From Ascidiella aspersa (lineage: Eukaryota): DNA of 64,000 nt. The notes under the pieces are model-generated. The model was not told the DNA's origin. It ran no database searches and worked only from the letters and a program-made list of their open reading frames with translations. The position numbers and the translations under genes are program-made. The DNA lies in contig OZ004609.1 of the NCBI GenBank assembly GCA_963924565.1, forward strand, positions 7,254,001-7,318,000, given 5' to 3'. Positions 1-49,053 of the stretch are shown in pieces. Each line of letters opens with the position of its first letter. The stretch's first letter is position 1.

Positions 1-3000
1 CGAGCAAGAACAAATAAATCAAAGTTTACACAAAAAACTTTATTTCATATTAAAACTTAAAGAAGCTGACTGCATGGTTTGATAGTAATTCATTTTATAG
101 CATCCTAGATTTTAAACATACAAGCTAGGCTTATATTATAAAATATAAGCAATGAAATAGTAAAAACACTGGCCGGGTCATTAGAATGACTGCAGATACT
201 ACAGCCCAAAGTAAAGCCTTTAATGCCCAACCGTCAGGAATAAACTTTTACTTACTCCGCTTGAATGTTAGAAGCTGAAGGTATGTTGAGCTTTGAAACG
301 ACGGCTTCCAATTTTTTGCAAAAAATATTGCTGTTGCAGTAATCGAGTGACGGAGCACAGGCAAAGGTTGTCTGAGGAAAAGAAATCCCGTGTCCTACAA
401 GCAGATAAAAAAGAATTTTCAAAATCGTAAATATTGTTAACAGACCAGTACAATAAGACCTCTAATTTACAAAATGGAATCTATTGAGTTTGAGATAAAT
501 AAAAAAAAATATTTTTTTAGCACCAAAACAAAGATTCACGGGAATGTTTCCTAATAAACACTTCCGAAATGTATTTTTGCTTAACAAGGATAAATAATTT
601 ATCCTGTTTTAGTTGTGGACATTACGTCGGTAGGAAGTATGGTTCAAACAGATAAATTTACACACCCCCCCCTTTTTTTTTCACCGTTGCTAAACAGAGG
701 CCTTAACGCTGTTGGATGATATTTTTTCCGCTAATCATGACACTACTGGGCACCGACCAAAAAACACAACACAAGGCACCCGAAATAAATGCAACAGTTA
801 CCTTTAACTATTCCGGTGACATCGATGTCGTTAGTCAGACAAGCTGTCGTGCAAGAACTGCTGCTGTATGTGTCGTGCGCAAAGTTAATAGCGCCTGTGT
901 GGCAACGCAAATATTGGCCTTTCCTGGGCGTTTCGACCAAGTCGGGTCGCATGGTGCTGGCCACTGCTACACTGACCGTGGACGGGACGGTAGACATGGC
1001 GATGGACATAACTGTGGACAGGGCATTGGGCAGAACAGTTTCATTTCCCGAGCCGTAGTTTAGTTTGTAAACTTCCTTGGGCTTGTTGCAGCGGTATGTG
1101 GAGCAGCAGGTTGGCTGGCAGTTCCTGAAAGCAGTTAAGCGATTAGAAAAACTTGCCTCGATGTTAAATTTCACCAAGTACTTAAGTCGTTTTACTTCAC
1201 AAAAAATTTTCGGTCACAACATCAGCTGAAAGGGTCAAATAGTAGTTTTCCAAGTAATGCGAACTCAGTTTATGCCTTTTTATTGTATGAAAGCAACATG
1301 ACCATTTAAAGTACAGTTTGAGACGGTAAGAAAAGTCAATTTTGCCCTTAAAAACAGTAAACCTGCCCTAGTATATACGATTGGCCTATAGTTAAAACCT
1401 ATAGTTGAAATCAGTAATAATACCAAGCAACGATATATAGCTTCTACATGGAACGTTATACGTACCAGATTTCGAAAAGTTAAAGGCTTTTCGAGTATCA
1501 CTTTCCCGTAACACTTATACTTAATGCGACACTAGCAACTTTTTTGTGTTAGTAAAAATCATTCAAAAGTATATAATACTTAATTTTCACATTGCAAAAT
1601 AAAAAATCAACCCAAAAGTGGGTGCCAGTATATAAAGAAATGGACAACAATCAAGTAAACAAGCAATCTTCACGTTTATTTATTTACCTTATTTTAATAT
1701 CGTAACCTCTTACGGCGTTTTGGGCGATGTTGGTTACTCTTCTGCATGTTGCCAGTTTATCAACGCAGGAAAACCAATGGCTGGTGCAGCTAAAACTGGA
1801 CTGTAGGAAATTGATCGTCATACCTGAATTAAATATCGTCACGTCTAACTTTGCATTGCAATTTCATTAAATTATTTGATGCGAAGGGAAATTAAGTAGC
1901 AATCTTTTTTAAACAGTTGACAAAAAAAATATTTTTCACCGTTAAGGAAAGGCCTTTAGTATAAAAAAATAAGTTTTTTTTAAGTAGGGTTTTTTAGTTT
2001 CTTGAAAGTTACAACACTGCCTAACAAAAGGGGGTCTTCGAAAACATATTTTTATAGCTTAATTACCTTTTACTGTGGTGTACGCCATGTAATCGATTCT
2101 CATACATGAGGTTGTGCAAGTGGTGTCGGCGACACTATCAACAGCGTAGTTTTTTACCCCGGTCTGGCATGTAACAGCCATTGCGCAGGCAAGCATTGAA
2201 AACAGGCAGGCGAAGCTCAGCCATTTCTTCATCGTGCAACTTTTGATAGCAAGCTTAACGCTACCAGGAATGCAAATAAATTATTGAGCACTAAAAAGGC
2301 AAAAGATTCTTTATTTTAACCTTTGCCGCAGTTTCTAATGACTTAAAATGATGCGGCGTAACTTAGTTATACGTCGTTTGTTTACTCAGGTTAAATGTTT
2401 GTATTGCGAAATAAAAAAGCGAGTTTAATATTTGCCTCGATTCTGACTGTAACACAACAATAGAAGACAACCCTTCTGCGTGTTACGTTTTATGCGAAAA
2501 ATGTTGATGAAAAGCAAAAAATTAAGTGGATTTTCAGCCTGGGGCGTATAACGAAAGATTATTTCTGCCATTAGACGTGCTGCGGTGAGAGATCTCAATC
2601 GTATACGAATAGACAAAGCCTTGTCCCAAAACTCGTCAGTTCTTCGCCAAGACAAAGTTACGTCAATGCGCGTGACGCTAAAACGTCACGGTACTTTTTG
2701 AACTTTGCAATGGACGCAATTTCACCAAATCTGAGTTAAAGTTTTATTTTGCATACTTTTTCATACCCGGTTAATGATTTTTTAGTAAACACTGGTGTTT
2801 TGTGAAATATGGTCAGGTGTTTCGCAAAAAAAATTATCAATTTGACTTTTTTTTTATTAAACAATGGTAAAAATCACTGAAAAAAGCGACTTGTTTTATG
2901 AAATTAATTATCCACCATCACCAATGTGAATGCTCCGTAATTATTTTCTATATTTGTTGTTTGATATGATACAATTGTGATTGCCTGATTAGGCTACATT

Positions 3001-7142: not shown

Positions 7143-8270
7143 TGACAACACAAATTTTTCATATTCTTGACAATGTAACCTTTCCATACTTCTAACAACA
7201 CAAAGTTGCCATAATTCTGACAACGTAACCTTGCCATATTCCTAACAACACAAAGTTGCCATAATTCTGACAACGTAACCTTGCCATATTCCTGAAAACA
7301 CAAAGTTGCCATATTCCTAACAACACAAAGTTGACATATTTCTGACAACGTAACCTTGCCATATCCCTTGCAACACAAAGTTGCCATATTCCTGACAACA
7401 CAAAGTTGCCATATTCCTGACAACGTAACCTTGCCATATTCCTGACAACACAAAGTTGCCATATTCCCGACAACACAAAGTTGCCATATTCCTGACAACG
7501 TAACCTTGCCATATTCCTAACAACACAAAGTTGCCATAATTCTGACAATGTAACCTTGCTATATCCCTTGCAACACAAAGTTACCATATTCCTGACAACA
7601 CAAAGTTGCCATATTCCTGACAACGTAACCTTGCCATATTCCTGACAACACAAAGTTGCCATATTCCTAACAACACAAAGTTGACATATTTCTGACTACG
7701 TAACCTTGCCATATCCCTTGCAACACAAAGTTGCCATATTCCTGACAACACAAAGTTGCCATATTCCTGACAACGTAACCTTGCCATATTCCTGACAACA
7801 CAAAGTTGCCATATTCCTAACAAAACAAAGTTGCTATATTCCTGAAAACACAAAGTTGTCATATTCCTAACAACACAAAGTTGACATATTTCTGACTACG
7901 TAACCTTGCCATATCCCTTGCAACACAAAGTTACCATATTCCTGACAACACAAATTTGCCATATTCCTGACAACGTAACCTTGCCATATTCCTGACAACA
8001 CAAAGTTGCCATATTCCTGACAACACAAAGTTGCCATATTCCTGACAACGGATGCTTGCCATATTGCTGACAATGCAACTTTACCATATTCCTGACAACA
8101 CAAAGTTGCCATATTCCTGACAACGTAATTTTGCCATATTCCTGACAACACAAAGTTGCCATATTCCTGTCAACACAAAGTTGCCATACTACTGACAACG
8201 AAAGCTTGCCATATTACTGAAAACGAAAGCTTGCCATATTCCTGACAACGCAACCTTACCATATTCCGAC
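7143..8270. repeat. 25-bp minisatellite, ~45 units, two main variants
   Basis: Units TTGCCATATTCCTGACAACACAAAG and TTGCCATATTCCTGACAACGTAACC, degenerate at both ends. Confidence 0.95.
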
Positions 8271-8714
8271 CGATAATCTCACAGTCATCGCAAAAACAAA
8301 CCGCAAGACTTTGAACCTCAGTAAGTAAAATTGCTTTGTTCGCATTTCGGTGTTAGGGAGCTTTGAGCTGTACCATTTCAATTATCCAGTCGATGATTTT
8401 GGGGTTAGATTTACTTCACTTGGCTTGATGATTGTTTGAAAAAGGCTTGAATTGCACCTACCGTACTTCGCACACAACTTGACTTGAAACAAGGTCATGA
8501 TCAAATGTGTTGTTTGGAACACTGCTTTAAGGTGGAATAATAAAAAGTGATCGTATTGTAGATGAAGTCAAAACTCAGGTGTCTCGCATAATAAGCACCA
8601 CGGCCTCAGTCGACCTGTGTTGGTTTACTCATAAAGATCACTAATTGCCTAAAAATATTCTTTTAATATCTGAGGCTATACTGTAATCCCTAAAGCAAGC
8701 CTGAACATTATGCT

Positions 8715-9490
8715 TAAAAAAAAACTTTTTTGACAAATTTCAGTGGGGACCCCATGGAAATGTTAGGTTGCGTTTAAAATCCCAACAAAACAAATCTGAG
8801 CACGTTTGGTTCAGTATTGCCCGTGCTACGTCAATTTGAAAATTCAGATTTAGGCTAAAAATTTGGAAAAAAGTAATTTGTCCTCCCCTAGATAATTTTT
8901 TTTTCTACTTTTTTGCTTTGCTTTGCAATTGGTATGAATAAATCTGTTTTACAGTTTAAAAGTAAGTGGTCATTGACATTGTATAAATGTTTCATTTTAA
9001 CAACATTTGTTAGGCTGTTTTATACAAAAAATGGCTTAAATATTTAAAATAAATTAATTGAATCACACAAGACATCAATTCAATAAAATAGTGCATTTGG
9101 TCTTCACACAATTATACCAATTACTTATCTAAAGTTCAAAAAAACGTGCTAAAAAGCCATTTTTCATACATAACAGCCTAACAAATGTTGTTGAAATGTG
9201 ACATTTGTACCACGACTACATACTTTTTTACTGTAAAACAGGTTTATTTATAGCTATTCAATTGCAAAGCAATGCAAAAAAAGTAGAAAAAAAATTATTT
9301 TAGGGGGGGAGGATAATTTATTTTTTTCCAAATTTTTAGCCTAAATCGGAATTTTTAAATTGACGTAGCACATTCACTACTGAACCAAACGTGCTCAGAT
9401 TTGTTTTGTGGGTTTTTTAGACGCAACCTAACAATTCTAGGGTATACCCACTTCAATTTGACAAAAAAGTGTTTTTTTGAACAACCCTAC
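8715..9490. mobile_element. Foldback / long-TIR non-autonomous element
   Basis: ~8715-9040 is the reverse complement of ~9150-9480 (e.g. AACAAATCTGAGCACGTTTGGTTCAGTA / TACTGAACCAAACGTGCTCAGATTTGTT), with a ~110-bp spacer. Confidence 0.8.
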
Positions 9491-10527
9491 TGAAAATTTC
9501 AACTTAGTGCTTTTCTGCAACAAGCAATATTAACTTCGCGGACCGCACACTGATTTTCATAATCAACGTCCATGATTTCGAGCGAACTAATTCGCAAATA
9601 TGCAGCTGAAATCCAAGCTATTCCCCCAAAGGGCGAAACAAATGTTTTTTTTGGTAAGCCCATTATTAAAAAAAACGTTACGCATTAAAATAAGACACTT
9701 AAAAGAGAATCGCATATATATATCGTTGTAATAAGCCGCCTGTTTTTTTAAAACGGGTCTTTGTAGTCCAGTGGTTCACCGAAAAAAATCTGTCATTTGG
9801 TAACATTGTTTAATCATAGGGAATCACCCATTTTTTTTAATAAAGCCTTATAAAATGCCTCGAAATTAAAAAAAAGTATTCTATTTTTTTGTGTATGAGG
9901 CAGTTAGCTGTGACCGTGAAGTGGCAACAAGATCAAAATGGCTGCGCAAATATTCAAATTTAAGATTATTTTCGGGCATAATGGTTAAAGGTTTCAGTTA
10001 GACGTATAAAAGGAATAGCATTTTGAACGATTCAACATCTCTTTATTTATTTATTTATTTATTGAGATGTTCAAAACGCTATAAACTTTTATTTTAGCTT
10101 TGTGATTTATTTCATTGCGTGAAACGCGAACTAATGGAAGAGAGTAGAAAGGTTGTTTTTGCAAAAGATCAGCAAAAAAAACGAACCTGTAAATGAACAA
10201 AGCAGCAGTTTGCGATAAGCAGAAAAACTTTGATGAAAAGCTAAAAATAAGTGGATTTTCACCCTGGGGCGTATAACGAAAGATTATTTCTGCCATAAGA
10301 CGCGCTGCGGTGAGAGATCTCAATCGTATACGAATAGATTACAACTTTTGTGCACCCATTTTAATTTGTTGACTGTAATTCTTCTTTGTGACACTTTTGG
10401 ATCTATTTTAATGTGTGTAATGTTGTATCGTCATGATTGATTTGTGAGTTGTGATAGGGTGCGAGCTGGAGCGAACTTTCGACGTAAAAGTGTGAAAAGA
10501 TGACTGGCAGTTTCAACAAAAATATCA

Positions 10528-10740
10528 ATGCGTTGCGTTTGGCCGATGTATGTCTGGTTGCAGTCGGTACACCACTTTGGTTTTGTGGAGTAGCGATGGT
10601 GCATCTTTTAGGTCAAACCAGGAGGCCAGCTTTGACGTTTCGTAACAAACCTCAGGTTAGCCTTGTCGTTTGTGCTTCGTTGAATAAAACGTTGGAGTTC
10701 TTGTCATATGTGCTGCAAAACAGGTCCGACAAATAGAAAT
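10528..10740 (-). mobile_element. Decayed Penelope-like retroelement fragment (GIY-YIG endonuclease region)
   Basis: With two frameshifts and a stop: LFVGPVLQHI*QELQRFIQRSTNDKANLRFV / TSKLASWFDLKDAPSLLHKTKVVY / DCNQTYIGQTQR. The KD...VVY...C...YIGQTxR signature is typical of Penelope endonucleases. Confidence 0.7.
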
Positions 10741-10847
10741 TTCATTACGCTAAAGCGCACATCTGCAACCGGCGTAATTCCGAACCCTTTTTATGGTGGC
10801 AATTATTAAGGAATTGCAAAATAGCACGGTCTACGAATGTACTAGGA

Positions 10848-11623
10848 CAGGGGCGTGCAACCTGCGGCCCGCGGGCCAAATGCTTTCGATTAGCTATACT
10901 TATGGCCATGTAAAGAAAGCTTAATAAAAATGTGTGTTTGATCTTTTTCGCTCATTTGAAATGTAATTGTTTTATATTCAATTTCAATGTTCATGTGAGT
11001 TGTAACAAAAAGAAAAAAAATTATCTGCGCAGCGCAGCTAAAAAGTAGTTTTTACCGCGAACATCTCGATCTAAATAAGTTTGCACAGCTGAGAAAATTA
11101 GTCGCTTTTAAGGTGGCATTGTCCGGTTCAACGTACGTGTGCGAGCAATTTTTTTTGTTGTAGTCACTTACACAGTGGTAGGCCAACTGTGGACCACGAT
11201 TTATTTTTGAATAGCTTGGTGTTGTCATGTACCGTATGGTTGTTGGCCGCATGATAGCCGTACATTCATTGGACTTTATTTTAACAATTGGTGTGGCATA
11301 TAATGTTTCAAATTGGCTCAGCTTGGAAAGACCCACGTGCCAAATGTGGTCTTGTGAGCGTGTAAAACTATAGTTTTTGCCAACTTTAACTCTAGGTATA
11401 CGCAAATTTTTCGCGCTTCGCGCGTATATGTACAATATTTCACCTTAAAACCAAATATCCTCTGAATCCGCCACTGTTTTCGTAGTAGTTTTACGTAGTG
11501 GGCCTTCAAGTAGCTCTGAAAAGACTACTTTGGGCCGCAACAAAACATTTGTCGACCACTGCCATAACAGGTAGAAGACGAGATATGCAAGTGGCCCGTG
11601 GGATGAAAGGTTGCACGCCCCTG
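10848..11623. mobile_element. hAT-type MITE with a nested second MITE (11173-11561)
   Basis: Perfect 16-bp TIR CAGGGGCGTGCAACCT / AGGTTGCACGCCCCTG and 8-bp TSD TACTAGGA (10840-10847, 11624-11631). The inner element CAGTGGTAGGCCAA...TGTCGACCACTG is homologous to 14345-14815. Confidence 0.88.
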
Positions 11624-12817
11624 TACTAGGATATCCTCTTTATTGTGGAAAACACAGCGTGCGTGATATTGTATGAACTGGCGATGTTATACGCCTTGGT
11701 TAAAAGAGCGTTAGCTCAATTCCGTTTGTACGTAAAGGGAATAAAACTGGACCAGTTGGCGTAAGTACCCGAGTGAGTCAGTTTACGAAAAACTTTGGTA
11801 AGTAAACCTTGACTACCGCGCTATAAAAGTACATCCCAAGTTTTGATATTTTAATTGGAATTACTAAAAAAACCCATACTGTGTTCCAAAATAACTGGCA
11901 GATTTGTCACAAATTATACGCAAATGGCACGTTGCAATGTCACGCAAAGGTGAAATTGTTAAAGTCTACGGTCAAACCGAAAAACTTTGATTTGTTTTTC
12001 TCGCGATTTGACCGTTCTGTTTTAGTAAAAATAGACTTGGTTGAGTGACGCAATTGCTCTACCTGGTTGCCGTTTGGCAACCGACATCCAAACAAATAAA
12101 GTGGACTATGCGTCAGGTAAAACTAAGCGTAGCAAGGTTGGAGTATTTACGTAAATCACGATGTCGTCATTATTACAATGAAGCTTTCAGTGCCTGCTAA
12201 ATGATGTAAACTTGTCTGAGGTATAAGTTGCTTTGGCGCGGTTAAAAATAGATAAGTCATTTTTATCGAGAACCATACAAGCAAATAACAAATGGCAACG
12301 TATATCTAATATCAACACGACAAAACTAGGTTGTGCAGCAAATGAACAGGTTTAACTCGTTCGCTTTCAGTTCGCTTTTAGCCAAGAAAAGACACATCTT
12401 ACTGAACCGAACCAATGCAACGAATCTATTAGTCTTTTTGAGGGAGATTAATTAATATTATTTAAAAAAAAATCGAAATGGCATAAATTGACGCTGTAAA
12501 ATACAAGTCGTGATGTCATGCGGGAGTGGATCGATTTTTTGACACGTTCGGTTTCATTTCAGGATTTTAACTCATTCGGTTACGGTTCGGAAAGAATTGA
12601 CCCAAAAGTGGTTCAAAAAGTTCTGGTTAGGGCCCGGTTCTACACCCTAAAGAAAACTAACATAATATAATTGAAACAACTGAAATGGTCTAAAATTGAT
12701 TCTAATCTAATTTTAAAGCGGTAAAATAAATCTAATTGCCCAATTGTGTACTCGACCATCTAAGAGGCCGCTGTATTACATCCGGACTTGGCGTTCAGCG
12801 TTCTACTGCTTTGTGTT

Positions 12818-12940
12818 GTTGCTGTGACTGTGGCTGTGGCTGTGGCTGTGGCTGTGGCTATTGCTGTTGCTGTTGCTGTTGCTGTTGATGTGGCTGTGGC
12901 TGTGGCTGTGGCTGTGCCGGTGACTGTGACTGTGGCTGTA
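12818..12940. repeat. Hexanucleotide microsatellite (GCTGTG/GCTGTT)n
   Basis: About 20 tandem hexamers, directly visible. Confidence 0.95.
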
Positions 12941-14344
12941 GTTAGACATGTAATTGACAAAACCGGTTTGAACAGTTTTAATTTGTTTATTGAGCATTTT
13001 TTATTTATTTTAGATTTGGCTTTGGACCGTTTTTAAAAACATAAAACAGCGATATTTACCTGAAAAATCCGTGCATGACCTCAAATTAGACTTCTTGTTT
13101 TTCGTGATTGTGGAGTGATTTACATTAGTTAAAAAAAATTGTATTTTCACCAAAGGCAATTACAAGGGCTAGAGGCCTTTCCTAGCGTCCACTACCTTTC
13201 AAATAATTTATTAAACGCAAATGGTACACAAAACAATTCATTGTAAAGCAGTTCGAAACCACACGCGCGGGTTTGAACTCCAAAAGATTGGTAGCTTTAG
13301 CGAAACAGCGTTTTGTTGTAACACTCCATCATCACGTCGGGGTCACCAATAAGGCGATGGCAGTCTTTATTCCAGGTGCGCCGAATCAAAAAGAACACAC
13401 TAGAACTGGCAATAAAAAGGCAGGAGAAAAATAAGAAAAAGGCAAACATAACGCTTCGATAAATCCGGGTCGGTGTAGTGTCGCTACAAGTGTTTATTAT
13501 CCAGTATGGCCGCGTGGCGCGAACTCCAACACTAAGCGCTAAATGTAGCACAGCGGCTAGCGGGTATGATAACTCGTTTGCTGATTAAAACGAATACAAT
13601 GTACCACACCACGATCAAAACGAGACTGCCGGGGTTCTCATTTCTGTAACTTCGTGCTCAGGCCGCCAAAATAAGGTCATTTACGTGGGTAGGGATAGTC
13701 CTATATTTCTACTAGTTGAAACATGTCATGGAGTTGTCGAATGGAAAAATCGAGTTGTCGGATGGAAAAAGATGGAAAAATAAAGTGCAAACTGACGGCA
13801 ACACCAGATCGATCGGCAGTAAAATTTAAAGCTTTTTGACTGGAATTCTTTGCTATCTACTAAAGTTTAGCAACAAACAAGACAGCATGTCCTATATTTC
13901 TACTAGTTGAAACATGTCATAGAGTTGTCTGATGGAAAAATCTGTATATTTTCTATCGTATTATATTGCTTCCTTAGGCCAGATATTCAACAATTGATGC
14001 TCACGAGGCGAGTCAGCCTAGAGCCCTAGAGCCTTAGATTACGAGACGATAGATATTTAACGAGTTTTCTCTTTCTATAAAGTGCAAACTGACGGCAACA
14101 CAAGATCGTTTGGAAGGAAAATTTAAAGCTTTCTGACTGGAATTCTTTGCTATCTACTAAAGTTTATCAACAAACAAGACAACATGTTGAAACACTGTAT
14201 GGTGAGCAACAAAACAAGCCATGTGGTTTGTTCGTACTACGTTAACCGTCAAACTAAGTTTGCCTATTGAACTATTTTAAATATCGACTTGTTTACTGTT
14301 TACTAAAACAAGCATTTGCCTTTACTTTTTAAAATCATTTAGAA

Positions 14345-14815
14345 CAGTGGTCGGCAAATTGTGGGACGCGGCCAAAATATGGGCCACAGAGCCATTTTAA
14401 GTGGGCTGAGAGTTACTTTTGAATAGTTTAGCGTTTTCATGTAGTTGTGAACCGCGCGATAGCCGTACAATCATTGCACTTTTTTTAAAAAGTTGGTTTG
14501 ATAAAGAATTTTTAAATTGCTCAGCTTAGAAAGGCCCACGTGCCAAATGAGGTCCTAAGAGCCTGTCGAACTATATTTTTTGCTAACTTTTCCTATATGT
14601 TATTGCAATGTTTTTTCGTGCTTTGCGCGTTAATTCTTCGTTTTATGTTTTACATTATGGCATAGCAGTGTTGTGGGCATTAAAGTGCTGTGTAATATTT
14701 CACTTTAAAATTAAATATGGCCAATCCTCCACTGTTTTCGTAGTGATTTTACGTAGTTGGCCTTCAATAGCTCTGAAAAGAGTACTTTGGGCCGCGACAA
14801 ATAGTTTGCCGACCA
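14345..14815. mobile_element. hAT-type MITE, same family as 11173-11561
   Basis: Ends CAGTGGTCGGCAAA...TTTGCCGACC; flanks ATTTAGAA/ATTTAGGA; internal similarity to 11173-11561. Confidence 0.7.
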
Positions 14816-15855
14816 TTTAGGACCAATTTGTTTTTTGCAGAATATCTGCAATATAATAACCAGCATCCGTTCATCAATGTGTCCCAATAAGATAATTAGG
14901 GTTTCTACAGAGTTCACACAGCATAGGACCGAATAAATGCTTCAACTTTACTGCAAATGATTCTGAAAGAACTTATGTGCAATCAAGCGACTGTTTATAA
15001 CTAATATGTTTGGGACTTGAGTCATTTCAAAATAGATTTCCACAACGCGGTTGCATATATGAGTAGAAAAATGTTTATTAATTTTAATAATGTTCATACT
15101 TACATACTATTTAATTTTATAAACTTATCAATGGCCTATTGTATACAGTGTTATGTACTGTGTTCGACGTTTATATATTATAAAATCAGTCATGTTTATA
15201 TATCAGTAAAACAGTTTGCGTTTATATAAATTATGAAATCTGTAGACCTATATGTTGATACTTCAGTAAAAGTGTTTATGTTACCCAACCACACAATTCC
15301 CACCACACTTTCCCACATATATCCAAGCTGCGTGGTAGATAAATAGGTTTTTTGCGGTCTGCAACGCGTGACAAGAATAAATCAGAAATGTTAAAATATA
15401 GATGTTGGCTAACTTTGGTTACAAATGCTTTAAAAAAATATTCTGCTTATTTAGCCAGGTCTTTATTAATTGGTTCTACAATTGCGGGTTCATTCGCCCT
15501 TACGATTTCAATATCTACTCGATATTCAAAGCTGCGTGCAAAAATATTTACGTGGGAATTTGATTAGAATACCGTACTAAATGCAATCATCCAAAGGAAT
15601 GTTATTTCGCCCTACTGTATTTCGTGGTACAGCGGTTGGTTGAACCGTAATGAGCCCACTTGTATTAGATTTCGAGACTTATCTTTATGATGAAACACGT
15701 CAGTTATAATGCAAGACCAAAAGTCCACGTTTATCGTATAACATTTTACCCTAAGAAGAAATCGTAAACCTGGAAGGCCTTTCATGACCTTTGCATAATA
15801 TGTACATGGTTTATTAAGCGCGGGATAAAATGTACACAGTACAGCCAACTGAGCC

Positions 15856-15945
15856 TTACGAAAGAAAGTTCAACGTGAAAACAGTTAAGATAGAAACCGA
15901 ACACAAGACGATCCATTGTCAAGCAGTTCGTTGAGCTCCGGCTTT
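15856..15945 (-). pseudogene. Orphaned GPI-signal coding relic of paralog B
   Basis: Reads KAGAQRTA*QWIVLCSVSILTVFTLNFLS* and aligns with the paralog C tail ESGAERSASQWVGLCAISILTAFKLYFQS*. TGA at 15919-15921 stands where C has TCA (Ser). Confidence 0.85.
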
Positions 15946-15957
15946 AACTGTGTAACT

Positions 15958-16302
15958 CAGGATTAGGCAATTATTTTAACAAAAGGCAGCATAAGCGACA
16001 AAAAGTGCATTTGCGGGTCAGATAAAGGGGACTGGAAATACACATAATATGAAGTGTGATTCCTTTGAAAATATACTGAAAATATTTTAGTTTTGAAAGC
16101 TAATAAGAGTGGGAATAAGTGATGATGCCTTGCATGTGAAATTGATTCACTAAAATGTTCTAAAATTACCAAAAAATGTGTTTTCTATGAAAAATGTTTT
16201 ATAAAATGTTAGCCAAGGGCCGAATTTAAATTGCTTTGCGGTCTAAATTAAATTGCTTTGGGGTCGAGCTTGGCTCGCAGGGACTTTTTCTGCCATTTGA
16301 TG
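15958..16302. mobile_element. Decayed MITE-like insertion inside the last exon of paralog B
   Basis: ~345 bp absent from the homologous exon of paralogs C and D. Starts CAGGATTAGGCAA (hAT-MITE-like end); the opposite end and the flanking duplication are degenerate. Confidence 0.55.
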
Positions 16303-19228
16303 TTGTATATTCTGGAAGGATCCCGAGCGTTGCATTTCGAAGAGTAACAACACTTTGTTTTGCAGTTTCTGTAACAAACATTCGTTGTTGTTAGTCGACT
16401 TCCATTGGATTATAAAATCCTATCCGTACATTACCGTCGAATATTTTTCTAAAAAACACTTGAATTTTAAAGTCTTACAAAATATTATTGTTAAAATTAT
16501 TTCGTAGAAAAACGCAGGACATGGTAGATTGGCATTTTATTTTGTACCAAGCTCAATGGACCATTCCACACGCAAATACAATGATCAAGGAACAAACCCT
16601 ATATTTAAACACTCTGTTTATTGATTTGAACAGAACGTAATATGTTCAAAGCTAAGATTTAGACATTTTCGAATTTATTTAGTCGTAATGCGATCTATTT
16701 GAGCAAACCACCACAGGCGATATGAGTCGCTTAACGCTGTTAGGCGAGCAAGCATAAATAAATCAAAGTTTACACAACAAAACTTTGTTGCATATCAAAA
16801 CTTAAAGAAGCTGAAGTCAGGGTTTGTAAGTAATTCTTTTTTTAAACGTGCAATTTGAGTTAGGCTTATAGTATCATAGAAACAATGAAATATCAAAAAC
16901 ACTGGCTGGATCATTAGAATGACTGCAGATACTACAGCCTAAAGTAAAGCCTTTAATGCCCAACCGTCAGCAATAAACTTTTGCTTACTCGGCTTGAATG
17001 CTAGTAGCTGAAGGTATGTCAAGCTTTGAAACGGCGGGTTTCAATTGTTTGCAAATAAGATTGTTGTTGCAGTAATCGAGATGCGGAGCACAGGAAAAGG
17101 TTGTCTGAGGAAACGAGAACCCTGTTCCTACAACGCGATAAATAAATGTTGCAATTTGAAAAATCGTTAATATTGGTAACAGACGAAAAACGTAACAAGT
17201 ACAAAAATATCTTTAATTCAGAAAAAACAAAATCTGTTGGGTTAAGAGGTATTTCTTTTGTAAGTAAAATATTTCTTCTTTTTTTTTTAGTTCAAAACTT
17301 TGTTTAGAACTGAGAAAAAGTTTCGCGGAAATGTTGCCTAATAAACAAAAAAATTAAAGCATTTATTGGTAAAAAAGATAAAGCATTTATTATTTATTTA
17401 GGCCAGTTTTGGATAGAAAAATTAGGTCTGAAGGAATTAATTTTCAAACCTCTATAGTATATGTTTCAACAGATATAACGCAAAACGAAGACAGACAAAA
17501 TGTAACCCAACCATTTTACACTCCTGCTAAAACAGCAGCTTTAACGCTGATGGCAGTTATTTTTCTGCTAACCAGGTCAATACTGGATACCGACCAAAAC
17601 TACCACACGAGTAACCTGAAAAAAGTATCATGGGTACCTTTTATCACTGCGGTGACATCGATCTCGTTGGTCAGGCAAGCTGTCGTGCAAGAACTGCTGC
17701 TGCTGTATGAGTCGTAGGCAACGTTAATAGTGCCTGTGTGACAGCGCAAATATCGGCCTTTCGTCGGCGTTTCGATCAATTTGGGTCGCGTGGTGGTGGA
17801 CACTGCTTTGCTGACCGTGAACGGGACAGTAGTCATGGCAATGGACATGACCGTGGACGAAACATTGGGCAACACGTTGTCATTTTGCGAGCCGTAGCTT
17901 AGCTTGTATTCACCCTCAGGCTTGTTGCAGCTGTTTGTGGAACAGCAGGTTGCCTTGCAGTCCCTGGAAGCAGTTAAGCGTTTCGATAAACATGCTCCGC
18001 AATAAAACTGTACCAAATACTCAAGTCGTGTTACTACACAAGAAACAACCAGTGTCAACAGTAGCTAACCTGGTCAAATAGCCGTTTGTTAAGTAACGCA
18101 CTGTCATTTTATGTCAAAAACATGGCTAACTAAAATTGAACAATACTTTCCAATAACACTTATTCTGAATACGATACTAGCAACTGCTTGGTGTGTATCA
18201 GAACATTTTTAAGACTTACGCTTTTTTAGTTTTATTTGTTTGTGGGGGTGGGGGGGTGGGGCAAAAGTGCCCTTTTCATGAAAAGCTTCCTCTCTTGTTT
18301 TACTTAAAAATAGAAAAATTAGAAAATTCAAGTAACTTTTACTAGTCCACAGGGCCGACAGGAATAGGGCTGGAGCTACAAAAAATCCAAACAAATTTGT
18401 CAAATGACATGGTTGACATTTGTTAAAACATTTTTGGTACCATTTTAAGCCAATCTATAAGGCGTGGCCGCAAAAAAAATTCCGGGCGAGTACCCCGGTA
18501 CCCCCCAATATTTCGGCTGGCTACGCTCGCCTGCAGTCTATATTGCCCTTACCAAAAAAGTTATCCCCCTTGCCCTAAAATCGCTCCAGCGTCCCAGGTT
18601 TTATATTCATGTATGTCACTTTAAAGTTGCACAAGTAACATAACCAATCATGTTATTAATGAGCATTTAAAGTTGTGCGCTTGGGAATTTAGCTTATTGG
18701 TAATTTAAAGTCGCAATGAAAGACTGAGATCGTATCTTTAGATCAAACCTATAACATGATAATCCTGTAACATTGCTAAAAATTCGACCTAGACATGGGT
18801 GGACCAGTATTTGAGAACCAACGAGCAAATAAACAAGAAAACTTTAGGTCGAGATGCTCACTCTATTTTGATAGCGAAACCTCCCGCATTGTTTTCGATG
18901 GCGTTGGTGAGTTGCTTGCATGTGGCCTCCTTATCAATGCAGGATAATCCAGCGCTGGTGCAGCTAAAACTGGATTGTTCAAAACTGATCGGCATACCTG
19001 AAATAAAAATCGTCACGAGAGGTTCTTCGAAAACATATATGTATAGCTTAATTAAGTCTTACCCTTAGCTATGCTGTGCACCATGTAATCGATTCTTATA
19101 CATGAGGTTGTGCAATTAGTGTCGGTCACAGTATCAACAGCGTAGTTTTTTACCCCGCTCTGGCATGTAACAGCCATTGCGCAGGCAATCAGTGAAAACA
19201 AGCAGACGGAGCTCAACAAGACCTTCAT
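16248..19228 (-). CDS. Two-domain Ly6/uPAR-like protein, paralog B; ~295 aa, lacks GPI tail (basic C-terminus derived from an insertion)
   Basis: Exons 19063-19228, 18862-18997, 17638-17963, 16989-17127 and 16248-16368 (888 nt, open). MKVLLSSVCLFSLIACAMAVTCQSG...DCKATCCSTNSCN...NCKTKCCYSSKCNARDPSRIYNIKWQKKSLRAKLDPKAI*. All 20 domain cysteines are retained. Confidence 0.82.
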
Positions 19229-22200
19229 CGTGCAATTTTTGATTTTAGGTTTAACGCCACCAATAATGCAAATAAAGTATTGAGCATCTAAAATTCGTGG
19301 CGCGTTTATAAGCGCCGTCCATTTTTTTCCTTTTTGTGAAATACATAACTCTCTTTGTGAAATATTCAGCGTACTAGCTCATAACGATTTATTTTAAACT
19401 TTTTTACCTCCGCAATTTCGAAAAGTCCCGACTTAAAGTTTTATTTTGTGTACTTTTCCATAGCTTCTTGTGAAATATCTAGCCGTATAGCTAATCCGAT
19501 CATAGGCGACGCATTACTATTACACAAACGAAATTTTGTGGTAAATTTAACGCGAAAGGAATCTACCATTCATGCATTTTGGTGTTGAGAACACATGAAA
19601 GAGGCACACGACTCATAAAAGCTTAACAACCAACGTTTTATGCTTTTTTAAACATTCGCGCAAAAGTTGTTGTTTTCGGTGTTCGAATGTTTGTTCTACG
19701 AAAAGTTTTTCGCCCTTTTTGCATGTTCATTACTTCGGTTTATTTAGGTATAAAAGAGCTTATTTTGCAATGTTCTTTTTCTACGTTAACGTCAAGCCTA
19801 ATCTATATAAAAGAATAGAAATGACAGAAACATTTGGCTTCGTTCAAAAATGTTTATGATTTAAGTTTAAAAGCAGCTCAAATTAAATTTCTTCGGAAAT
19901 ACATTTTCAAAGCCATTTAGAACCAAATAAAAACAAGACGTAGATACAAATTAACCACCAACTTTGTTTTTGAAAAAAGCATAAATAAAAACGAATTTGG
20001 TCTCTAACTGAATGCGTCCGCCATTAGGGACATTAATCGATTAAGTGTAAAACGTGTTAAAATAAATTCTTTTAAAATGAAGCCGTCAACTTTTGTTTGG
20101 TGTTATGCAAAATTATTTAATGGATAAAATATCCCATGTTTCAACAATGGCTGCAAAACACTGCACTACAGAGAGTGGAAAACAATTGAGACGCGAAGCA
20201 AGCCTGTTGTCTAATCTTATCACCAAGAATTTTTAAAACGAGGAACTGAAATTGCCTCCGGTGTATAACGCCTCGTTTTAATTCTGTGACGTGCTTTCAT
20301 ACCTAAGTGAACGAGCAGCCCATTTATAGCAAACTAAGCTGATCAAGCTTCACAGAATTTGTCTTCAGAATGTTGCTCATAAAATGGAACGAATCCAAAA
20401 AACACAAACGACGCTTTAAGCGTGTTTAATACGTTCAAAAACAAACTAGGCAAAAATTGCGCGTCACAAACTTGGATAAACGGCATTTATACATATTATT
20501 AAAACGCCAGCTTGCAAAACTCTTCAAAACATGCAAGTTGCTTTGCTATTTAGGTATAGTGAATGATATCCATTCATTTAGTTGGCCAAATAAACGACTG
20601 CCAATTAGGTTCTTTGAATGTGAGCATCGCTGTAATAAGCCGCCTCTTTTTATAAAAATACGAATCTTTGTGGTCAAGTGGATTACGAGAAAAACAACAG
20701 TCATTTGCTAATATTGTAATCGTTGGGACTCAATCAAGCTTTCAAAAACAGGCCGTATAAAATTATTGTTTGAAAAGTATCATTTTTTGTGCACGAGGCA
20801 GTTAGCTGTTTCCGTGAAGTGGTAAACCAAATAGGTTACTATGGCTGCACAAATCTTCAAATTTTAGATTCATCATAGGGGAAAATAGCCAAAGGTTTTA
20901 CTTAGACGTATAAAAGTAATAGCTAAGGCGAATATTTTTTTGACCTAAAAATTTAGAAATTTTGACCTAAAAAATTAAAATTTTGAGAAATTTTTACATA
21001 AAAATAATTTATTTTGACAAAATTTTGACCTGTTAGAAAAAAATTGATTTAAATAACATAGGCGTCGTTATTCACACGATTTTTTATAACGTATATTGGT
21101 CTAATGAAGATATAATACGGTTGAAAAGACTTGGCAAATTTTGACCTAACGTGTAAAAAAATTTTGACTTTTTTTGATAAATCAAAAAATATTCGCCATA
21201 GTAATAGTACAAACCATATAGAAATGCGCAGCATGTAGAACGCTGCGAACGCTGTTCATTCATTTATTGAGATGTTCAAAGCGATATGTACTTTAACATA
21301 AGTTTTGTGATTCATTTTATTTTGTGCAACGTAAAAGTAATGGAAGAGATTAGAAAAGTTGTTTTTGCAATAGAACAGCAAAATACACGAACCTGTTAAT
21401 GACCAAAGCAATTTGCGATAAGGAGAACAATGTTGGTGAAAAGCAAAAAATAAGTGGATTTTCAGCCTGGGGCGTAGAACGAAAGAATATTTCTGCCATA
21501 AGACGCGCTGTGCTGAGAGATCTTAATCGTATACGAATAGACAAAACTGATGTCCCAAAACTCGTCAGGCTGGTTTGCAAAATAGAATACGACTAATTCG
21601 CGAAGGACTTTAGTCGAACTAAAGACGTTAGTTTAAAAATGGTAAGTTTCAATTTCATGCGATGTTCACCTCAAGTCAACTGCTTTAAACTCTCTTGGAA
21701 ACATGTTTAAAACTTTTGTGTACACACTTTAATATGTTAACTCGAAAGCAACTCTGCGTCAATTTTTGTTGTACTTTCATTTTTTAAATCAAATTTTAAT
21801 GGAGTTTTATTTGTGAAATAACTTAAGTCAAAGTCAAGTCTGTGGAAAAATAGTCCAAGTTACCAGTTGCGCAAGTCAAGTCATTATTAGAACAAGTCAT
21901 CTCGAAGTCAAATCACTAATATCACGAACTAGAATCGTTGGTTAAAAAATGGTAAGTTTTAATTTCATGTTATGCTCTTCTCAAATCAACTCCTATAAAT
22001 TTTCTTAGAAACATGTTTACAACTTTTGTGCACCCATTTTAATTTGTTGACTGTAATTCTTCTTTGTGACACTTTTTGATCTATATTAATGTGTGTAATG
22101 TCGTATCGTTTAACGCATTCTTAACGACGACGTCACAAAGCTACGTCATAACATAGCGTCATAAATAAATAAATCTTGCGTTTATTGGATTTAAATTGGC

Positions 22201-41372: not shown

Positions 41373-41411
41373 GACGATTTGAATGTGAAACTATTCCTTA
41401 TTTTGTTGAAG

Positions 41412-46367: not shown

Positions 46368-49053
46368 ATGAAGGTTTGGTTGAGTTTTTTCTGCTTGTTC
46401 TCATTGCTCGCCTGCGCAATGGCTGTTATTTGCAATTTGGGCAAAAAAAACTACCTTAGGCAGAGTGTTGTACTTTTTTGGTGCCCAGACTCATGCTTGA
46501 GAGCCGACTACATGATGCACAGCACAATGCTCGGTAAGGCTTTGACTTACCGTATGTAGATGGCGCTATTTTGCTGTTCTTTCGCAGTGTTATAAGTGCA
46601 AAGAGGGAACTTTTGCTACTAAAGCGTTAAAATGTTTACATCTTATAACTCTAAAAAAAATTAAGTGGGATAGTCTCGAGCCTTGTTAAGACAAGCCTAT
46701 TTCTTCCTTTAGGGGAAATAAATCCTGTTTCTTATGTTCACAATCAAGCTACCTTATTTCGTTACAAATTACGTTCCAACTTAGTTTGCTTTCAATGTTA
46801 TAAAATTAGGAAAAATCCATTACAAACTTCGACCTGAAACAATTATAATACCAATCGTGTCAATGTTTATTTCAGGTAAATCTACATATTTTCGACAATC
46901 CGATTTTAGGTGCGGCAGTCGTAGTTCATGCATTGATAAGGTGGCCGCATGCAGCAAAATCATCAACAACATCGTAAGTTTGTCATCATTCATCAGAACG
47001 ACAGCAAGGTAAGCTGTTTACAAAAAACTAGATGTTGCTTCCCTAGCCCCCGCTGAAAACATTAGACAACAAAACAACTATTACAATTACCTTCAGAAAA
47101 AGGTCACATCTCCAAATATAGAAAGAATTTAAAAAAATAAATACGTTATTTTTTTTAAGAGACTGGACACTGGCCTACGAAATTTGATAACAATGGAGAC
47201 TCTGAAACCATGTGTTACGTAGCTTAGTGCATTGACATAAAATGACCCTGACGCCCAGTTTGAACATCAAACAATGGTGGCTAATTTCCCCTGGTCAGAT
47301 AAGATGAAAATTTTTTGGATTATATATCGACCCTATATGACACAACTAAGTTGAGAAACATTTAAACGTTTTAGATATTTCACTTTTTTGCTTAAAAAAG
47401 GGATACTATGATGAAAAATATCTTTTGTAAGCAAATCAGATGCCGATGAAATCACTTTTGAAAGCAATAATGACTCGTTTGTCATTGATTCTAGCTAGTC
47501 CATTTGTAGACAGGGTCATCTATGGTAAAATCCGGGGCAAAGTTTTCTTTGGCATGTTGTTGTTATTCAATAATGATTTCTATGCAATCAAATTCTTCCA
47601 TAGGTCGATTTGTAAGTCTCTTAATACAACTCTTAGTGTAAGATTACTACGATCAATGAAATTACTCTTTCCTATTACCTAAAGTTGGTTTATGTTATTT
47701 CAGTTCCGTTTGTTGTGTCATTACAGTACCGTTACACACTGAACGAAAATCCTGGAAGGACTATCGTAATCTATATATTAATTCCGGGTGGGGTGCCGTA
47801 AGCCATAAAGTTTCGGCACCACTACAGTATAAAATCGGAGCGAAAACGCTCAACCGCTTTTCTCTTTGCTAAACGCTCAACCGCTTTCAGTGACTGTATT
47901 GCGACCTGTTGCTCAACAAACGGTTGTAATTTACCCGAGGGAGAATACACGGTCAGCAGCAACCCATCAAGAACCACCGTCCATTATTGGCTTATAAATC
48001 CGCCCACCGTCCAGTCCACCACCCAGTCCACCTCCAGCACCAGCATAGCAGTAACCAGCAACGAAACGCCGGTAATAGGCCGACTCTCGAGATGCCACAA
48101 AGGCACGCTAAGCGTCCACCAGCAGTCGTTTACGACCATTCCTTGCACGACCGCTTGCCTGACCAACGAGGTCAACGTCACCGGGAAAGTTGAAGGTAAT
48201 CATTCGCATGGCTGCGGACGACATTTAAAACAGTGGTTAAAGTTAGACGACACGGTTCGAAAAATATTTTTTATCGTTCTAGTGAGAAAATTATTCTGTT
48301 TTCACCCCTGGTTTAAAACAACCCGATCAAATCAAGTTCGTTTTGTAAATTAAAGATGTTGCTCAATTATTGGTATTTTTGCGATTCGAATGTGAAACGT
48401 TTCCTTATTTTGTTTAAGGGCGGTCAGTGGTTTTCGACATGACAACATTTGCCTGTGCTCGGTCTCTCGATTACTGCAATAGCACTCTTTCTTGCAAAAC
48501 TTTGGAAAACGGCATTTCAGACCTCAACATACCATCAGCTTCGGACCTTAATGTAAAGTAAGTGAAAGGGCTTTATGCTGTAGTATCTACAGTAATGTTG
48601 GTAATCCGGCCAATATTTTTTTATTCCTGTCTCGACTTAGGCCTAACGCGAAAGGAAAACTTGTAAAAGTCTAAAGTTATGCTTCAAACATAGCCTACAT
48701 CTAAAGATAGGCTACTTTTCAAATTAATTTGCCGCGATAAAACAATAATTTGCCGGTTGGTATTTATGGGTTATTACCTGAGCAATATAACAAACTAAAA
48801 CTAAATTTTTCACATAAAAAAATAAATATTTTTGTTCAAAACTTTAGCACTCACTCATACACGCCGAATATAACAGCCCAATTTTTTCTACAGAAATTGC
48901 GAAACAAAATGTTGCCTCTCATCGGATTGTAACACTCGGGATCTGTCGAGAACTTACAATATGGAGAGCGGAGCTGAACGAAGTGCTTCACAGTGGGTTG
49001 GCTTATGTGCGATTTCTATTCTAACTGCATTCAAGTTGTATTTTCAGTCATAA
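46368..49053 (+). CDS. Two-domain Ly6/uPAR-like GPI-anchored protein, paralog C; ~300 aa, intact
   Basis: Exons 46368-46533, 46876-47008, 47891-48195, 48419-48557 and 48894-49053 (903 nt, open). MKVWLSFFCLFSLLACAMAVICNLG...DCIATCCSTNGCN, T/S/P linker, RCHKG...NCETKCCLSSDCN, then ESGA (small residues, omega-like) and hydrophobic tail WVGLCAISILTAFKLYFQS*. Confidence 0.88.

What the first reader, a model, noticed from the sequence alone, without database searches (positions are those of the whole stretch)
15856..16368. An insertion severed the GPI anchor of paralog B and supplied a new basic C-terminus
Seen: right after the final CCxxxxCN, exon 5 of B runs into ~345 bp of MITE-like DNA encoding KWQKKSLRAKLDPKAI*. 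The original tail resumes on the far side (AGAQRTA*QWIVLCSVSILTVFTLNFLS*) and has gained a stop, while the upstream 295 codons, all cysteines and all splice sites remain intact. Inference: a membrane-bound protein was converted into a secreted one (decoy or soluble ligand), analogous to secreted versus GPI-anchored Ly6 members. The decay of both the insertion and the relic suggests B persisted afterwards.
Basis: partly seen in the sequence, partly recalled or inferred. Interest (0 to 1): 0.82.

Follow-up and report, generated by a model that had tools for sequence, protein, structure and literature searches.

The report
Transposon cut off a membrane-anchor signal
A small transposon landed in the last coding exon of a cysteine-rich surface-protein gene in an invertebrate, replacing its membrane-anchor signal with 17 new residues and a stop; the gene is still transcribed, and the same cut end sits on three gene copies.

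Summary
Gene B (minus strand, 5 exons, 295 codons) has 345 extra bases, 15958-16302, nine codons after the last CCxxxxCN. At least ten paralogs in the same tandem cluster run straight on into a 39-residue tail that looks like a GPI signal.

- **The insert is a hAT-type MITE.** It has terminal inverted repeats, 8-bp target duplications and at least 40 dispersed copies. Its first 51 bases are read in frame as IKWQKKSLRAKLDPKAI and then TAA.
- **B is transcribed with the insert.** Stranded RNA-seq confirms three of B's introns, including the one ending at 16368. It shows unbroken coverage through the MITE and the relic tail to the old poly(A) signal. No read splices to a hydrophobic tail.
- **The event is not private to B.** The same MITE and the same relic stop (TCA to TGA) are in paralog A and in copy E, which has lost exons 1-2.
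- **A is a chimera.** Its head is 91-100% identical to anchored paralogs J and K. From mid exon 4 onward it is B-type.

Selection tests (dN/dS 0.5-0.9) cannot separate function from decay. Secretion is inferred, not shown. This is a clean new instance of a known mechanism, a transposon-made truncated and probably soluble protein. This scan had not noted it on other DNA.

The parts
19063..19228 (-). Gene B exon 1: ATG at 19228, signal peptide MKVLLSSVCLFSLIACAMA, and the start of cysteine domain 1
   Evidence: ORF. RNA joint 18994|19060 (5 reads, GT..AG on the minus strand). Exact splice site.
18862..18997 (-). Gene B exon 2: the middle of domain 1
   Evidence: RNA joints 18994|19060 and 17962|18861 (7 reads). 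Splice context.
17638..17963 (-). Gene B exon 3: end of domain 1 (DCKATCCSTNSCN), a Ser/Thr-rich linker, and the start of domain 2 (LRCHTG...)
   Evidence: Acceptor confirmed by the RNA joint. The donor AAAG|GTACCC was placed by sequence and homology. No B-specific read joint was seen for intron 3.
16989..17127 (-). Gene B exon 4: the middle of domain 2
   Evidence: Donor confirmed by the RNA joint 16368|16989 (10 reads, 7 start positions). The acceptor was placed by homology and frame.
16303..16368 (-). Gene B exon 5, the original coding part: NCKTKCCYSSKCNARDPSRIYN. It includes the left 8-bp target-site duplication ATATACAA at 16310-16303.
15958..16302 (-). hAT-type MITE, 345 bp, inserted in exon 5. 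Its first 51 bases (16301-16251) encode IKWQKKSLRAKLDPKAI. Its TAA at 16250-16248 now ends the protein.
   Evidence: It is absent from paralogs C, D, F, G and H. At least 40 dispersed copies at 68-79% identity occur on many contigs. Family ends CAGACCTGGGCAAAC...ATTGCCCACCCCTG and 8-bp duplications are shown. The copy is about 18% diverged from the family consensus. It is covered without a break by RNA reads.
15950..15957 (-). Right copy of the target-site duplication, AGTTACAC
   Evidence: It matches the left copy at 6 of 8 positions when A's left copy AAATACAC is used. Uninserted paralogs have this octamer only once.
15856..15949 (-). Relic of the original tail, now 3' UTR: (V)KAGAQRTA, TGA at 15921-15919, QWIVLCSVSILTVFTLNFLS, and the old TAA at 15858-15856
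   Evidence: The TGA replaces the TCA or TTA found in paralogs C, F, G and H, and A and E share it.
15810..15815 (-). AATAAA poly(A) signal still in use by the gene
   Evidence: Read from the sequence. RNA depth falls to 3.6 in 15741-15887 and is zero below 15741.
1..2232 (-). Paralog A, exons 1-4. Its exon 5, MITE and relic lie just left of the window at G000:C3:7253135-7253660. A is a chimera with a J/K-type head and a B-type MITE-cut tail.
46368..49040 (+). Paralog C, an uninserted reference copy. Its tail is NTRDLSRTYNMESGAERSASQWVGLCAISILTAFKLYFQS and then the stop.

Best explanation
A non-autonomous hAT transposon (a MITE of about 310-345 bp) inserted into the last coding exon of one member of a tandem family of secreted-pathway proteins. 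Each member has two 10-cysteine domains that resemble Ly6/uPAR domains.

**The insertion.** It lies nine codons after the final CCxxxxCN and just before the small-residue site (..KAGA..) of a 39-residue C-terminal signal that looks like a GPI-attachment signal. The element is read in frame for 17 codons and then supplies a TAA. Because the stop lies in the last exon, the mRNA should escape nonsense-mediated decay. The mRNA keeps the MITE and the old tail as 3' UTR and still uses the old poly(A) signal.

**The predicted product.** It has a signal peptide, two cysteine domains and a short basic tail. It has no hydrophobic C-terminus, so it should be released as a soluble protein rather than lipid-anchored.

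**Spread of the cut end.** The cut 3' end was then copied within the cluster. Duplication gave E, which has since lost exons 1-2. Recombination inside exon 4 put the cut end onto a different head and gave A. A's ectodomain is nearly the same as that of the still-anchored paralogs J and K.

**Shown here:** the insertion, its kind, the new stop, transcription and splicing of B, the sharing among A, B and E, and the chimeric make-up of A.

**Inferred:** GPI anchoring of the uninserted paralogs, secretion of A and B, and any function.
For: - **Insertion relative to 5 paralogs in the window region, with the tail contiguous in at least 10 copies:**
- **MITE family, inverted ends and target duplications:**. 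Of 19 copies, 9 have 8-bp duplications matching at 6 or more of 8 positions, and 2 are perfect.
- **New reading frame and stop:**
- **RNA:** stranded reads come from the gene's strand only. Joints 16368|16989 (10 reads), 17962|18861 (7 reads) and 18994|19060 (5 reads) are all GT..AG. Depth is 16-28 across 15888-16328 with no joint inside 15741-16368, and coverage ends near the AATAAA.
- **A is probably transcribed too:** A-type variants appear in the MITE reads, namely C after 16096 in 14 of 31 reads and G after 15955 in 8 of 12.
- **Shared MITE and shared TGA in A, B and E:**
- **A is a chimera with its breakpoint in exon 4:**
- **B's 885-nt frame is intact.** Intron 4, which A and B share by descent, is 15-20% diverged. 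Introns carry about 1 indel per 10 substitutions, while the exons carry a single in-frame indel.
- **A-B dN/dS is 0.59, below 1 at P = 0.0075:**
- **Decay in this cluster is visible where it happens:** E lost about 700 bp at only 5% divergence.
Against: - No protein-level data exist. Secretion and GPI anchoring are inferred from sequence only, and no GPI predictor was available.
- dN/dS is high throughout the family: B-E 0.66, A-J/K about 0.54, and J-K has 11 non-synonymous changes to 1 synonymous. It therefore cannot separate diversifying selection from relaxed constraint.
- Part of the A-B divergence predates the insertion, because A's head comes from another lineage. The open-frame argument is weaker than it first looked.
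- The new tail itself evolves at about the neutral rate: 24% between A and B against 15-20% in intron 4. Its sequence is probably not what matters.
- The RNA reads carry variants that match neither B nor any reference copy exactly (17036, 17825). Some coverage may therefore come from unassembled alleles or copies.
- Only about 6% of one RNA run was read.
Confidence: 0.6

Rival explanations
1. A and B are transcribed but functionless. The MITE killed the anchor and the copies are young, decaying pseudogenes that have not yet picked up a frame break. Gene conversion from working neighbours keeps parts of them looking intact.
For: - E, the closest copy to B, has already lost exons 1-2.
- dN/dS is 0.66 for B-E and about 0.9 for A against J/K over exons 1-3, neither different from 1.
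- A's head is 91-100% identical to working-looking J and K, so recent conversion could explain its open frame.
- The far 3' ends of A and B were homogenised recently, to 97-100% identity.
- The new tail shows no amino-acid constraint.
Against: - B's head has no close donor in the cluster. Its best match other than E is about 65-71% amino-acid identity. Yet it has no stop, no frameshift and good splice sites.
- The MITE-bearing 3' ends of A and B are 15-20% apart in intron 4, and the MITE is about 18% from its consensus.
- In neutral simulations, 78 substitutions leave the frame open only 7% of the time, before counting indels.
- B is spliced correctly and expressed.
- Overall A-B dN/dS is below 1 (P = 0.0075).
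Confidence: 0.3
2. B is still membrane-bound. Either transcripts bypass the MITE by splicing to the relic or to another hydrophobic exon, or the stop is read through.
For: An AG lies just before the relic (..ttacacag|TTAAAG), so an acceptor is conceivable.
Against: - No joint of any kind was seen within 15741-16368, although 10 reads cross intron 4 just upstream. Coverage is continuous through the MITE.
- The relic carries its own in-frame TGA in A, B and E.
- MITE plus duplication adds 353 bp, which is not a multiple of 3, so read-through would be out of frame.
Confidence: 0.03
3. The insertion is an assembly artefact or a rare allele of the sequenced individual.
For: None beyond the general risk in repeat-rich tandem clusters.
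Against: - The same junctions occur at three separate loci.
- DNA contigs of two runs cross the left junction (16171/16177-16329), and RNA reads from another sample cover both junctions.
Confidence: 0.01

Closest known systems
Transposon-derived truncated or soluble receptor isoforms in vertebrates, for example IFNAR2-S made by an exonised element (PMC10515820), IL18R1-Short from a LINE2 (PMC13232192) and IL-13Ra1-LOR1a (PMC7617988)
   Same: A mobile element supplies the last coding residues and the stop. The extracellular part is kept and the membrane-attachment part is lost. A still-anchored counterpart with nearly the same ectodomain exists (J/K against A).
   Different: Here the element sits directly in the terminal coding exon, so the truncation is constitutive and not an alternative splice. 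The element is a DNA-transposon MITE, not a retroelement. What is lost is a putative GPI signal, not a transmembrane and signalling domain. The anchored and cut forms are separate paralogs. No decoy activity has been tested.
Ly6/uPAR (LU, three-finger) family, with GPI-anchored members (CD59, Ly6) and secreted members (SLURP1/2); from general knowledge
   Same: The domains have ten cysteines and about 95 residues. The first Cys is at position 3 (VTC, LRCH). Each domain ends in CC-x4-CN and is followed, in most paralogs, by a short spacer and a hydrophobic C-terminus. Anchored and tail-less members coexist.
   Different: No sequence-profile or fold evidence was obtained here. There are two domains on a Ser/Thr-rich linker. 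No homologue was found in 1.84 billion representative proteins with the exon-3 query. How secreted vertebrate members arose is not known to involve a transposon.
hAT-superfamily MITEs; from general knowledge
   Same: Short non-autonomous element, terminal inverted repeats that begin with CAG, 8-bp target duplications of the nTnTAnAn kind, and tens to hundreds of copies.
   Different: No autonomous partner was looked for. The superfamily is assigned from target-duplication length and end sequence only.

Membership tests
Ly6/uPAR (LU) three-finger domain | C-terminal CC-x4-CN signature and 8-10 cysteines in 70-95 residues, with the first Cys near position 3 | tested here: met
   Domain 1 has Cys at mature positions 3, 20, 24, 49, 56, 63, 84, 88, 89 and 94, then N95. 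Domain 2 has the same pattern and ends CCYSSKCN. Read from the exon translations.
Ly6/uPAR (LU) three-finger domain | Significant match to the Pfam UPAR_LY6 / toxin clan profiles | tested here: inconclusive
   Exon-by-exon hmmscan found no LU family. Each domain is split over three exons, and the spliced protein was deliberately not submitted. phmmer against the PDB found nothing. phmmer against 1.84 billion representatives gave only two spurious bacterial hits through the Ser/Thr linker.
Ly6/uPAR (LU) three-finger domain | Three-finger beta fold | not tested
   Structure prediction would need the joined exons, and that step was left out. The only lead is a feature match of 0.78 to the TGF-beta receptor II ectodomain, itself a three-finger fold. 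That score is below the level that counts.
GPI-anchored protein (the uninserted paralogs) | C-terminal signal: small omega and omega+2 residues, a polar spacer of 5-10 residues, then a hydrophobic stretch of 15-20 residues that ends the protein | tested here: met
   C, F, G and H end ..LK-SGA-ERTASQ-WIVLCAISILTAFKLNFLS, always 39 residues after CN. Mean Kyte-Doolittle value of the last 17 residues is 1.2-1.9, against -0.8 to -0.9 for A, B and E. This is by inspection only; no GPI predictor was available.
hAT-type MITE | Terminal inverted repeats, 8-bp target-site duplication, short length without a coding frame, many copies | tested here: met
   Ends are CAGACCTGGGCAA.. and ..TTGCCCACCCCTG. 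Among 19 copies, duplications are 8/8 in 2, 7/8 in 3 and 6/8 in 4. There are 40 scored matches out of 108 candidates.
Transposon-made truncated protein isoform | Element sequence lies inside the mature mRNA and provides the in-frame stop | tested here: met
   RNA reads run from exon 5 into and through the MITE with no joint.
Transposon-made truncated protein isoform | The truncated protein is made and is soluble | not testable with these tools
   This needs proteomics, or tagged expression with PI-PLC treatment or phase partitioning.

The most novel reading that the evidence does not exclude
The MITE-terminated last exon acts as a portable 'release' cassette inside a fast-evolving tandem cluster. 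Recombination has moved it onto at least two different ectodomain types. This created matched pairs of an anchored protein (J, K) and a soluble protein with nearly the same head (A), that is, receptor and decoy or cell-bound and diffusible ligand. Selection keeps both forms.
Probability: 0.2. Interest if true: 0.6.

Novelty: new member of a known kind. Interest (0 to 1): 0.38.

Why it matters
This case shows in one locus, step by step, how a lipid-anchored surface protein can become a soluble one through a single transposon hit in the last exon, and how that new end can then be passed to other paralogs by recombination. A against J/K forms a natural near-isogenic pair, with the same head and either the anchor signal or the cut tail. 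That pair would allow a direct test of what anchoring does for this uncharacterised family. The principle of transposon-made truncated receptors and of secreted versus anchored Ly6 members is already known. The value is therefore that of a clean, datable example in an invertebrate, not of a new mechanism.

Tried and rejected
- **Insertion private to B: rejected.** A and E carry it with the same target duplication and the same relic TGA.
- **Positive selection on the new basic tail: rejected.** The 54 tail-coding bases differ at 13 sites between A and B, against about 6% in the rest of the MITE. But synonymous changes are as frequent (pS 0.47, pN 0.19). The 24% divergence matches the 15-20% of intron 4, and the higher identity further 3' is a later conversion tract.
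- **A-B open-frame conservation as proof of constraint after the insertion: weakened.** A's head comes from the J/K lineage.
- **A short target duplication of another kind (15 bp, as for retroposition): rejected.** The family ends fix the element at 15958-16302 with 8-bp duplications.
- **Homologue searches led nowhere.**
  - Exon 3 against 1.84 billion representatives gave two bacterial proteins matched through the Ser/Thr linker. Their Pfam domains are unrelated.
  - The PDB sequence search found nothing.
  - Pfam searched exon by exon found nothing.
  - The atlas gave only a 0.78 lead.
- **Literature search for a transposon cutting a GPI signal:** nothing specific was found.
- Exons were searched separately by reference, and scripts handled them piece by piece.
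Full report
**Setting.** The window is G000:C3:7254001-7318000 of a 308-Mb animal genome. It is AT-rich (GC 0.32-0.41) and has spliced genes. The finding concerns gene B on the minus strand.

**The observation.** On the minus strand, an acceptor at 16368 opens the last exon. It reads NCKTKCCYSSKCNARDPSRIYN, then IKWQKKSLRAKLDPKAI and TAA at 16250-16248. About 290 bases further on comes AGAQRTA, a TGA at 15921-15919, QWIVLCSVSILTVFTLNFLS, the old TAA at 15858-15856 and an AATAAA at 15815-15810. Alignment with paralogs C and D and with F, G and H shows that these copies run straight from ..SR.Y.. into ..LKSGAERTASQW.. and a hydrophobic end. That end is always 39 residues after CN.

**What the insert is.** A search of the whole genome with 15940-16320 found at least 40 dispersed matches at 68-79% identity on many contigs, out of 108 first-look candidates. 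I aligned eleven of them with flanks and built a consensus.
- The consensus defines an element of about 310 bp.
- Its ends are CAGACCTGGGCAAAC... and ...ATTGCCCACCCCTG, which are inverted repeats of each other.
- Of 19 copies with both ends recognisable, 2 have perfect 8-bp target duplications, 3 match at 7 of 8 and 4 match at 6 of 8. Chance would give about 2 of 8.
- The duplicated sites resemble nTnTAnAn.

Together these are the marks of a hAT-type MITE. In B the element occupies 15958-16302. It is flanked by ATATACAA (16310-16303; AAATACAC in A) and AGTTACAC (15957-15950), and uninserted paralogs carry this octamer once. The B and A copies are 18-19% diverged from the family consensus, against 7-20% for the other copies, so the insertion is not recent.

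**Gene model and RNA.** One stranded RNA-seq run with the same species label was laid on 15300-19700 at 97% likeness. About 6% of the run was read.
- All first mates lie on the + strand, which means the RNA comes from B's strand.
- Joints with GT..AG ends on the minus strand confirm three introns: 16368|16989 (10 reads, 7 start positions), 17962|18861 (7 reads) and 18994|19060 (5 reads).
- With this gives exons 19228-19063, 18997-18862, 17963-17638, 17127-16989 and 16368 onward, and a frame of 295 codons.
- Intron 3 was placed by homology only.
- Depth is 5-28 from 16475 down to 15888, 3.6 in 15741-15887 and zero beyond. Depth is also zero in the bins that lie wholly inside introns 3 and 4; two intron-2 bins (18240-18533), which hold a high-copy repeat, have depth below 1.
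- No joint lies inside 15741-16368.

The MITE and the relic tail are therefore kept in the mature mRNA as the end of the last exon, and the old poly(A) signal is still used. Because the stop lies in the last exon, nonsense-mediated decay is not expected (general knowledge).

**Not private to B.** The full query, covering the exon end, the MITE and the relic, recurs at 92% identity at C3:7226776-7227152 (copy E) and at 86% at C3:7253204-7253607. The second place is exon 5 of paralog A, just left of the window. A, B and E share the element, its position, the target duplication and the relic TCA-to-TGA change.

E is a B-like copy, about 95% identical, with a deletion of roughly 700 bp. The deletion removes most of exon 1, all of intron 1, all of exon 2 and part of intron 2. 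E is best read as decayed.

**The cluster.** The terminal exon with its contiguous tail is present, without any stop, in at least 10 copies. All lie within C3:7.177-7.303 Mb. With the neighbouring 90 kb fetched, about 18 copies can be mapped. Some have one cysteine domain and some have two. Only A, B and E are cut.

**A is a chimera.** Sliding-window identity and informative sites give a clear picture.
- From its promoter to the first third of exon 4, A is 91-100% identical to two uninserted two-domain paralogs. These are J (window -79323..-76330) and K (-57610..-54618). Over the same stretch A is only 34-86% identical to B (70-86% where the two align).
- Within exon 4, at about A 360-250, A switches to the B/E type: 80-92% through intron 4, then 97-100% from the right half of the MITE onward.
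- The far 3' end of A is closer to B than E is. For the relic this is 98% against 91%, so a second, later conversion must have occurred.

The cut 3' end has therefore been placed by recombination on a second kind of head. A and J/K now form a pair with nearly the same ectodomain and different ends. Two A-type variants, an extra C after 16096 in 14 of 31 reads and an extra G after 15955 in 8 of 12, appear among the RNA reads. This suggests that A is transcribed through its MITE too.

**Is it functional?**
- *In favour.*
  - B is expressed and correctly spliced.
  - Its 885-nt frame has no stop and no frameshift.
  - All ten cysteines of both domains are in place.
  - Its head has no close donor in the cluster that could have repaired it.
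  - The MITE-bearing ends of A and B are 15-20% apart in intron 4.
  - Introns carry about one indel per ten substitutions, while the exons have one in-frame 3-nt indel.
  - Neutral simulations leave the frame open in 7% of runs with 78 substitutions and in 0.8% of runs with 156.
  - A-B dN/dS is 0.59 (P = 0.0075).
- *Against, or neutral.*
  - Part of the A-B divergence predates the insertion, because of the chimera.
  - B-E dN/dS is 0.66 and A against J/K is 0.53-0.55 over exons 1-4. Neither is significantly below 1.
  - In exons 1-2, A against J/K shows 11 non-synonymous changes to 1 synonymous.
  - J against K shows 11 non-synonymous to 1 synonymous over exons 1-4.
  - The family as a whole evolves at a ratio near or above 1, so this measure cannot tell diversifying selection from decay.
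  - The new tail differs at 13 of 54 bases between A and B, which is about the neutral level, with pS 0.47 and pN 0.19. Its stop probably matters and its sequence probably does not.

I put about 0.6 on the whole reading of working soluble proteins and about 0.3 on transcribed pseudogenes.

**What the family is.** Both domains have ten cysteines, a first Cys at position 3 (VTC, LRCH) and a CC-x4-CN end. This is the Ly6/uPAR signature. No profile or fold evidence was obtained.
- Pfam searched exon by exon found nothing relevant.
- The PDB sequence search found nothing.
- The search of 1.84 billion representatives gave only spurious hits through the linker.
- The atlas gave a sub-threshold lead, 0.78, to the TGF-beta receptor II ectodomain.

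Each domain is split over three exons. GPI anchoring of the uninserted paralogs is inferred from the shape of their tails.

**Comparison with what is known.** Transposon-supplied ends that truncate receptors into soluble or decoy forms are documented in vertebrates (PMC10515820, PMC13232192, PMC7617988). This case differs in four ways. The truncation is constitutive because the element sits in the terminal coding exon. The element is a DNA-transposon MITE. What is removed is a putative GPI signal. The cut end was then shuffled among paralogs. A search for a described case of a transposon cutting a GPI signal found nothing specific. I class this as a new member of a known kind.

**Open points.** Some RNA reads carry states that match no reference copy.
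- The variants 17036 G>C (10 of 10 reads) and 17825 G>T match none of A, B or E.
- An exon-2 end reading ..ATTCTACCTATCAAAATAGA is joined to B's exon 3.
- Seven reads that may be copies of one molecule join an exon-4 end encoding IPSASNLQAE to the B-type exon 5.

The RNA donor probably has alleles or copies that are absent from the assembly. Template switching in the library cannot be excluded.

Noticed in passing
G000:C3:7174678-7177671 (J) and 7196391-7199383 (K), against window 1-2296 plus 7252850-7254000 (A): J and K are 96-100% identical two-domain paralogs about 21.7 kb apart, so they come from a recent segmental duplication. They keep the hydrophobic tail. A shares their head at 91-100% identity but has the MITE-cut tail, and the breakpoint lies inside exon 4.
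   Followed up: yes
G000:C3:7224135-7227359 (copy E; loci L002 and L032): E is a B-like duplicate, about 95% identical. It keeps the promoter and the first 11 codons, but a deletion of roughly 700 bp has removed the rest of exon 1, intron 1, exon 2 and part of intron 2. It also has a 9-bp deletion inside its MITE.
   Followed up: partly
window 16989-17127 (exon 4 of B): B and E differ at 18 of 139 bases here (12.9%), against 3-5% in the flanking introns. Most changes are on B's side and include 8 amino-acid changes. Synonymous sites are raised as well (pS 0.19). A conversion from an unsampled donor is as likely as selection.
   Followed up: partly
window 18240-18533 (intron 2 of B): DNA contig depth rises from about 200 to 3,400-21,000 in two runs. 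Many loose ends and joints lie here. This is a very high-copy repeat inside the intron.
   Followed up: no
window 7143-8267: A tandem array of a 25-bp unit (TGACAACACAAAGTTGCCATATTCC) with about 45 copies at 81-85% match. It also produces a spurious 156-codon ORF on the minus strand.
   Followed up: no
window 12817-12939: A hexanucleotide microsatellite, (TGTGGC) repeated about 20 times.
   Followed up: no
ext region, window coordinates -16199..-15074, -60887..-59212 and others: There are one-domain members of the family in which the signal-peptide exon runs directly into domain 2 (MKVWLSSVGLFSLLACAIAVKRCHTGAINF...). The family therefore varies in domain number through internal deletions.
   Followed up: no
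window 16255-16368 and 17963 (RNA reads of run X5): Some reads join B-type exon 5 to an exon-4 end encoding IPSASNLQAE. Others join B's exon 3 to an exon-2 end that no reference copy has. These may come from unassembled alleles or copies in the RNA donor, or from template switching in the library.
   Followed up: partly
window 41378-43060 (+): Partial paralog D has only exon 4 and exon 5. Its tail is frameshifted and reads on for 63 residues after CN. It is probably a dead fragment.
   Followed up: no
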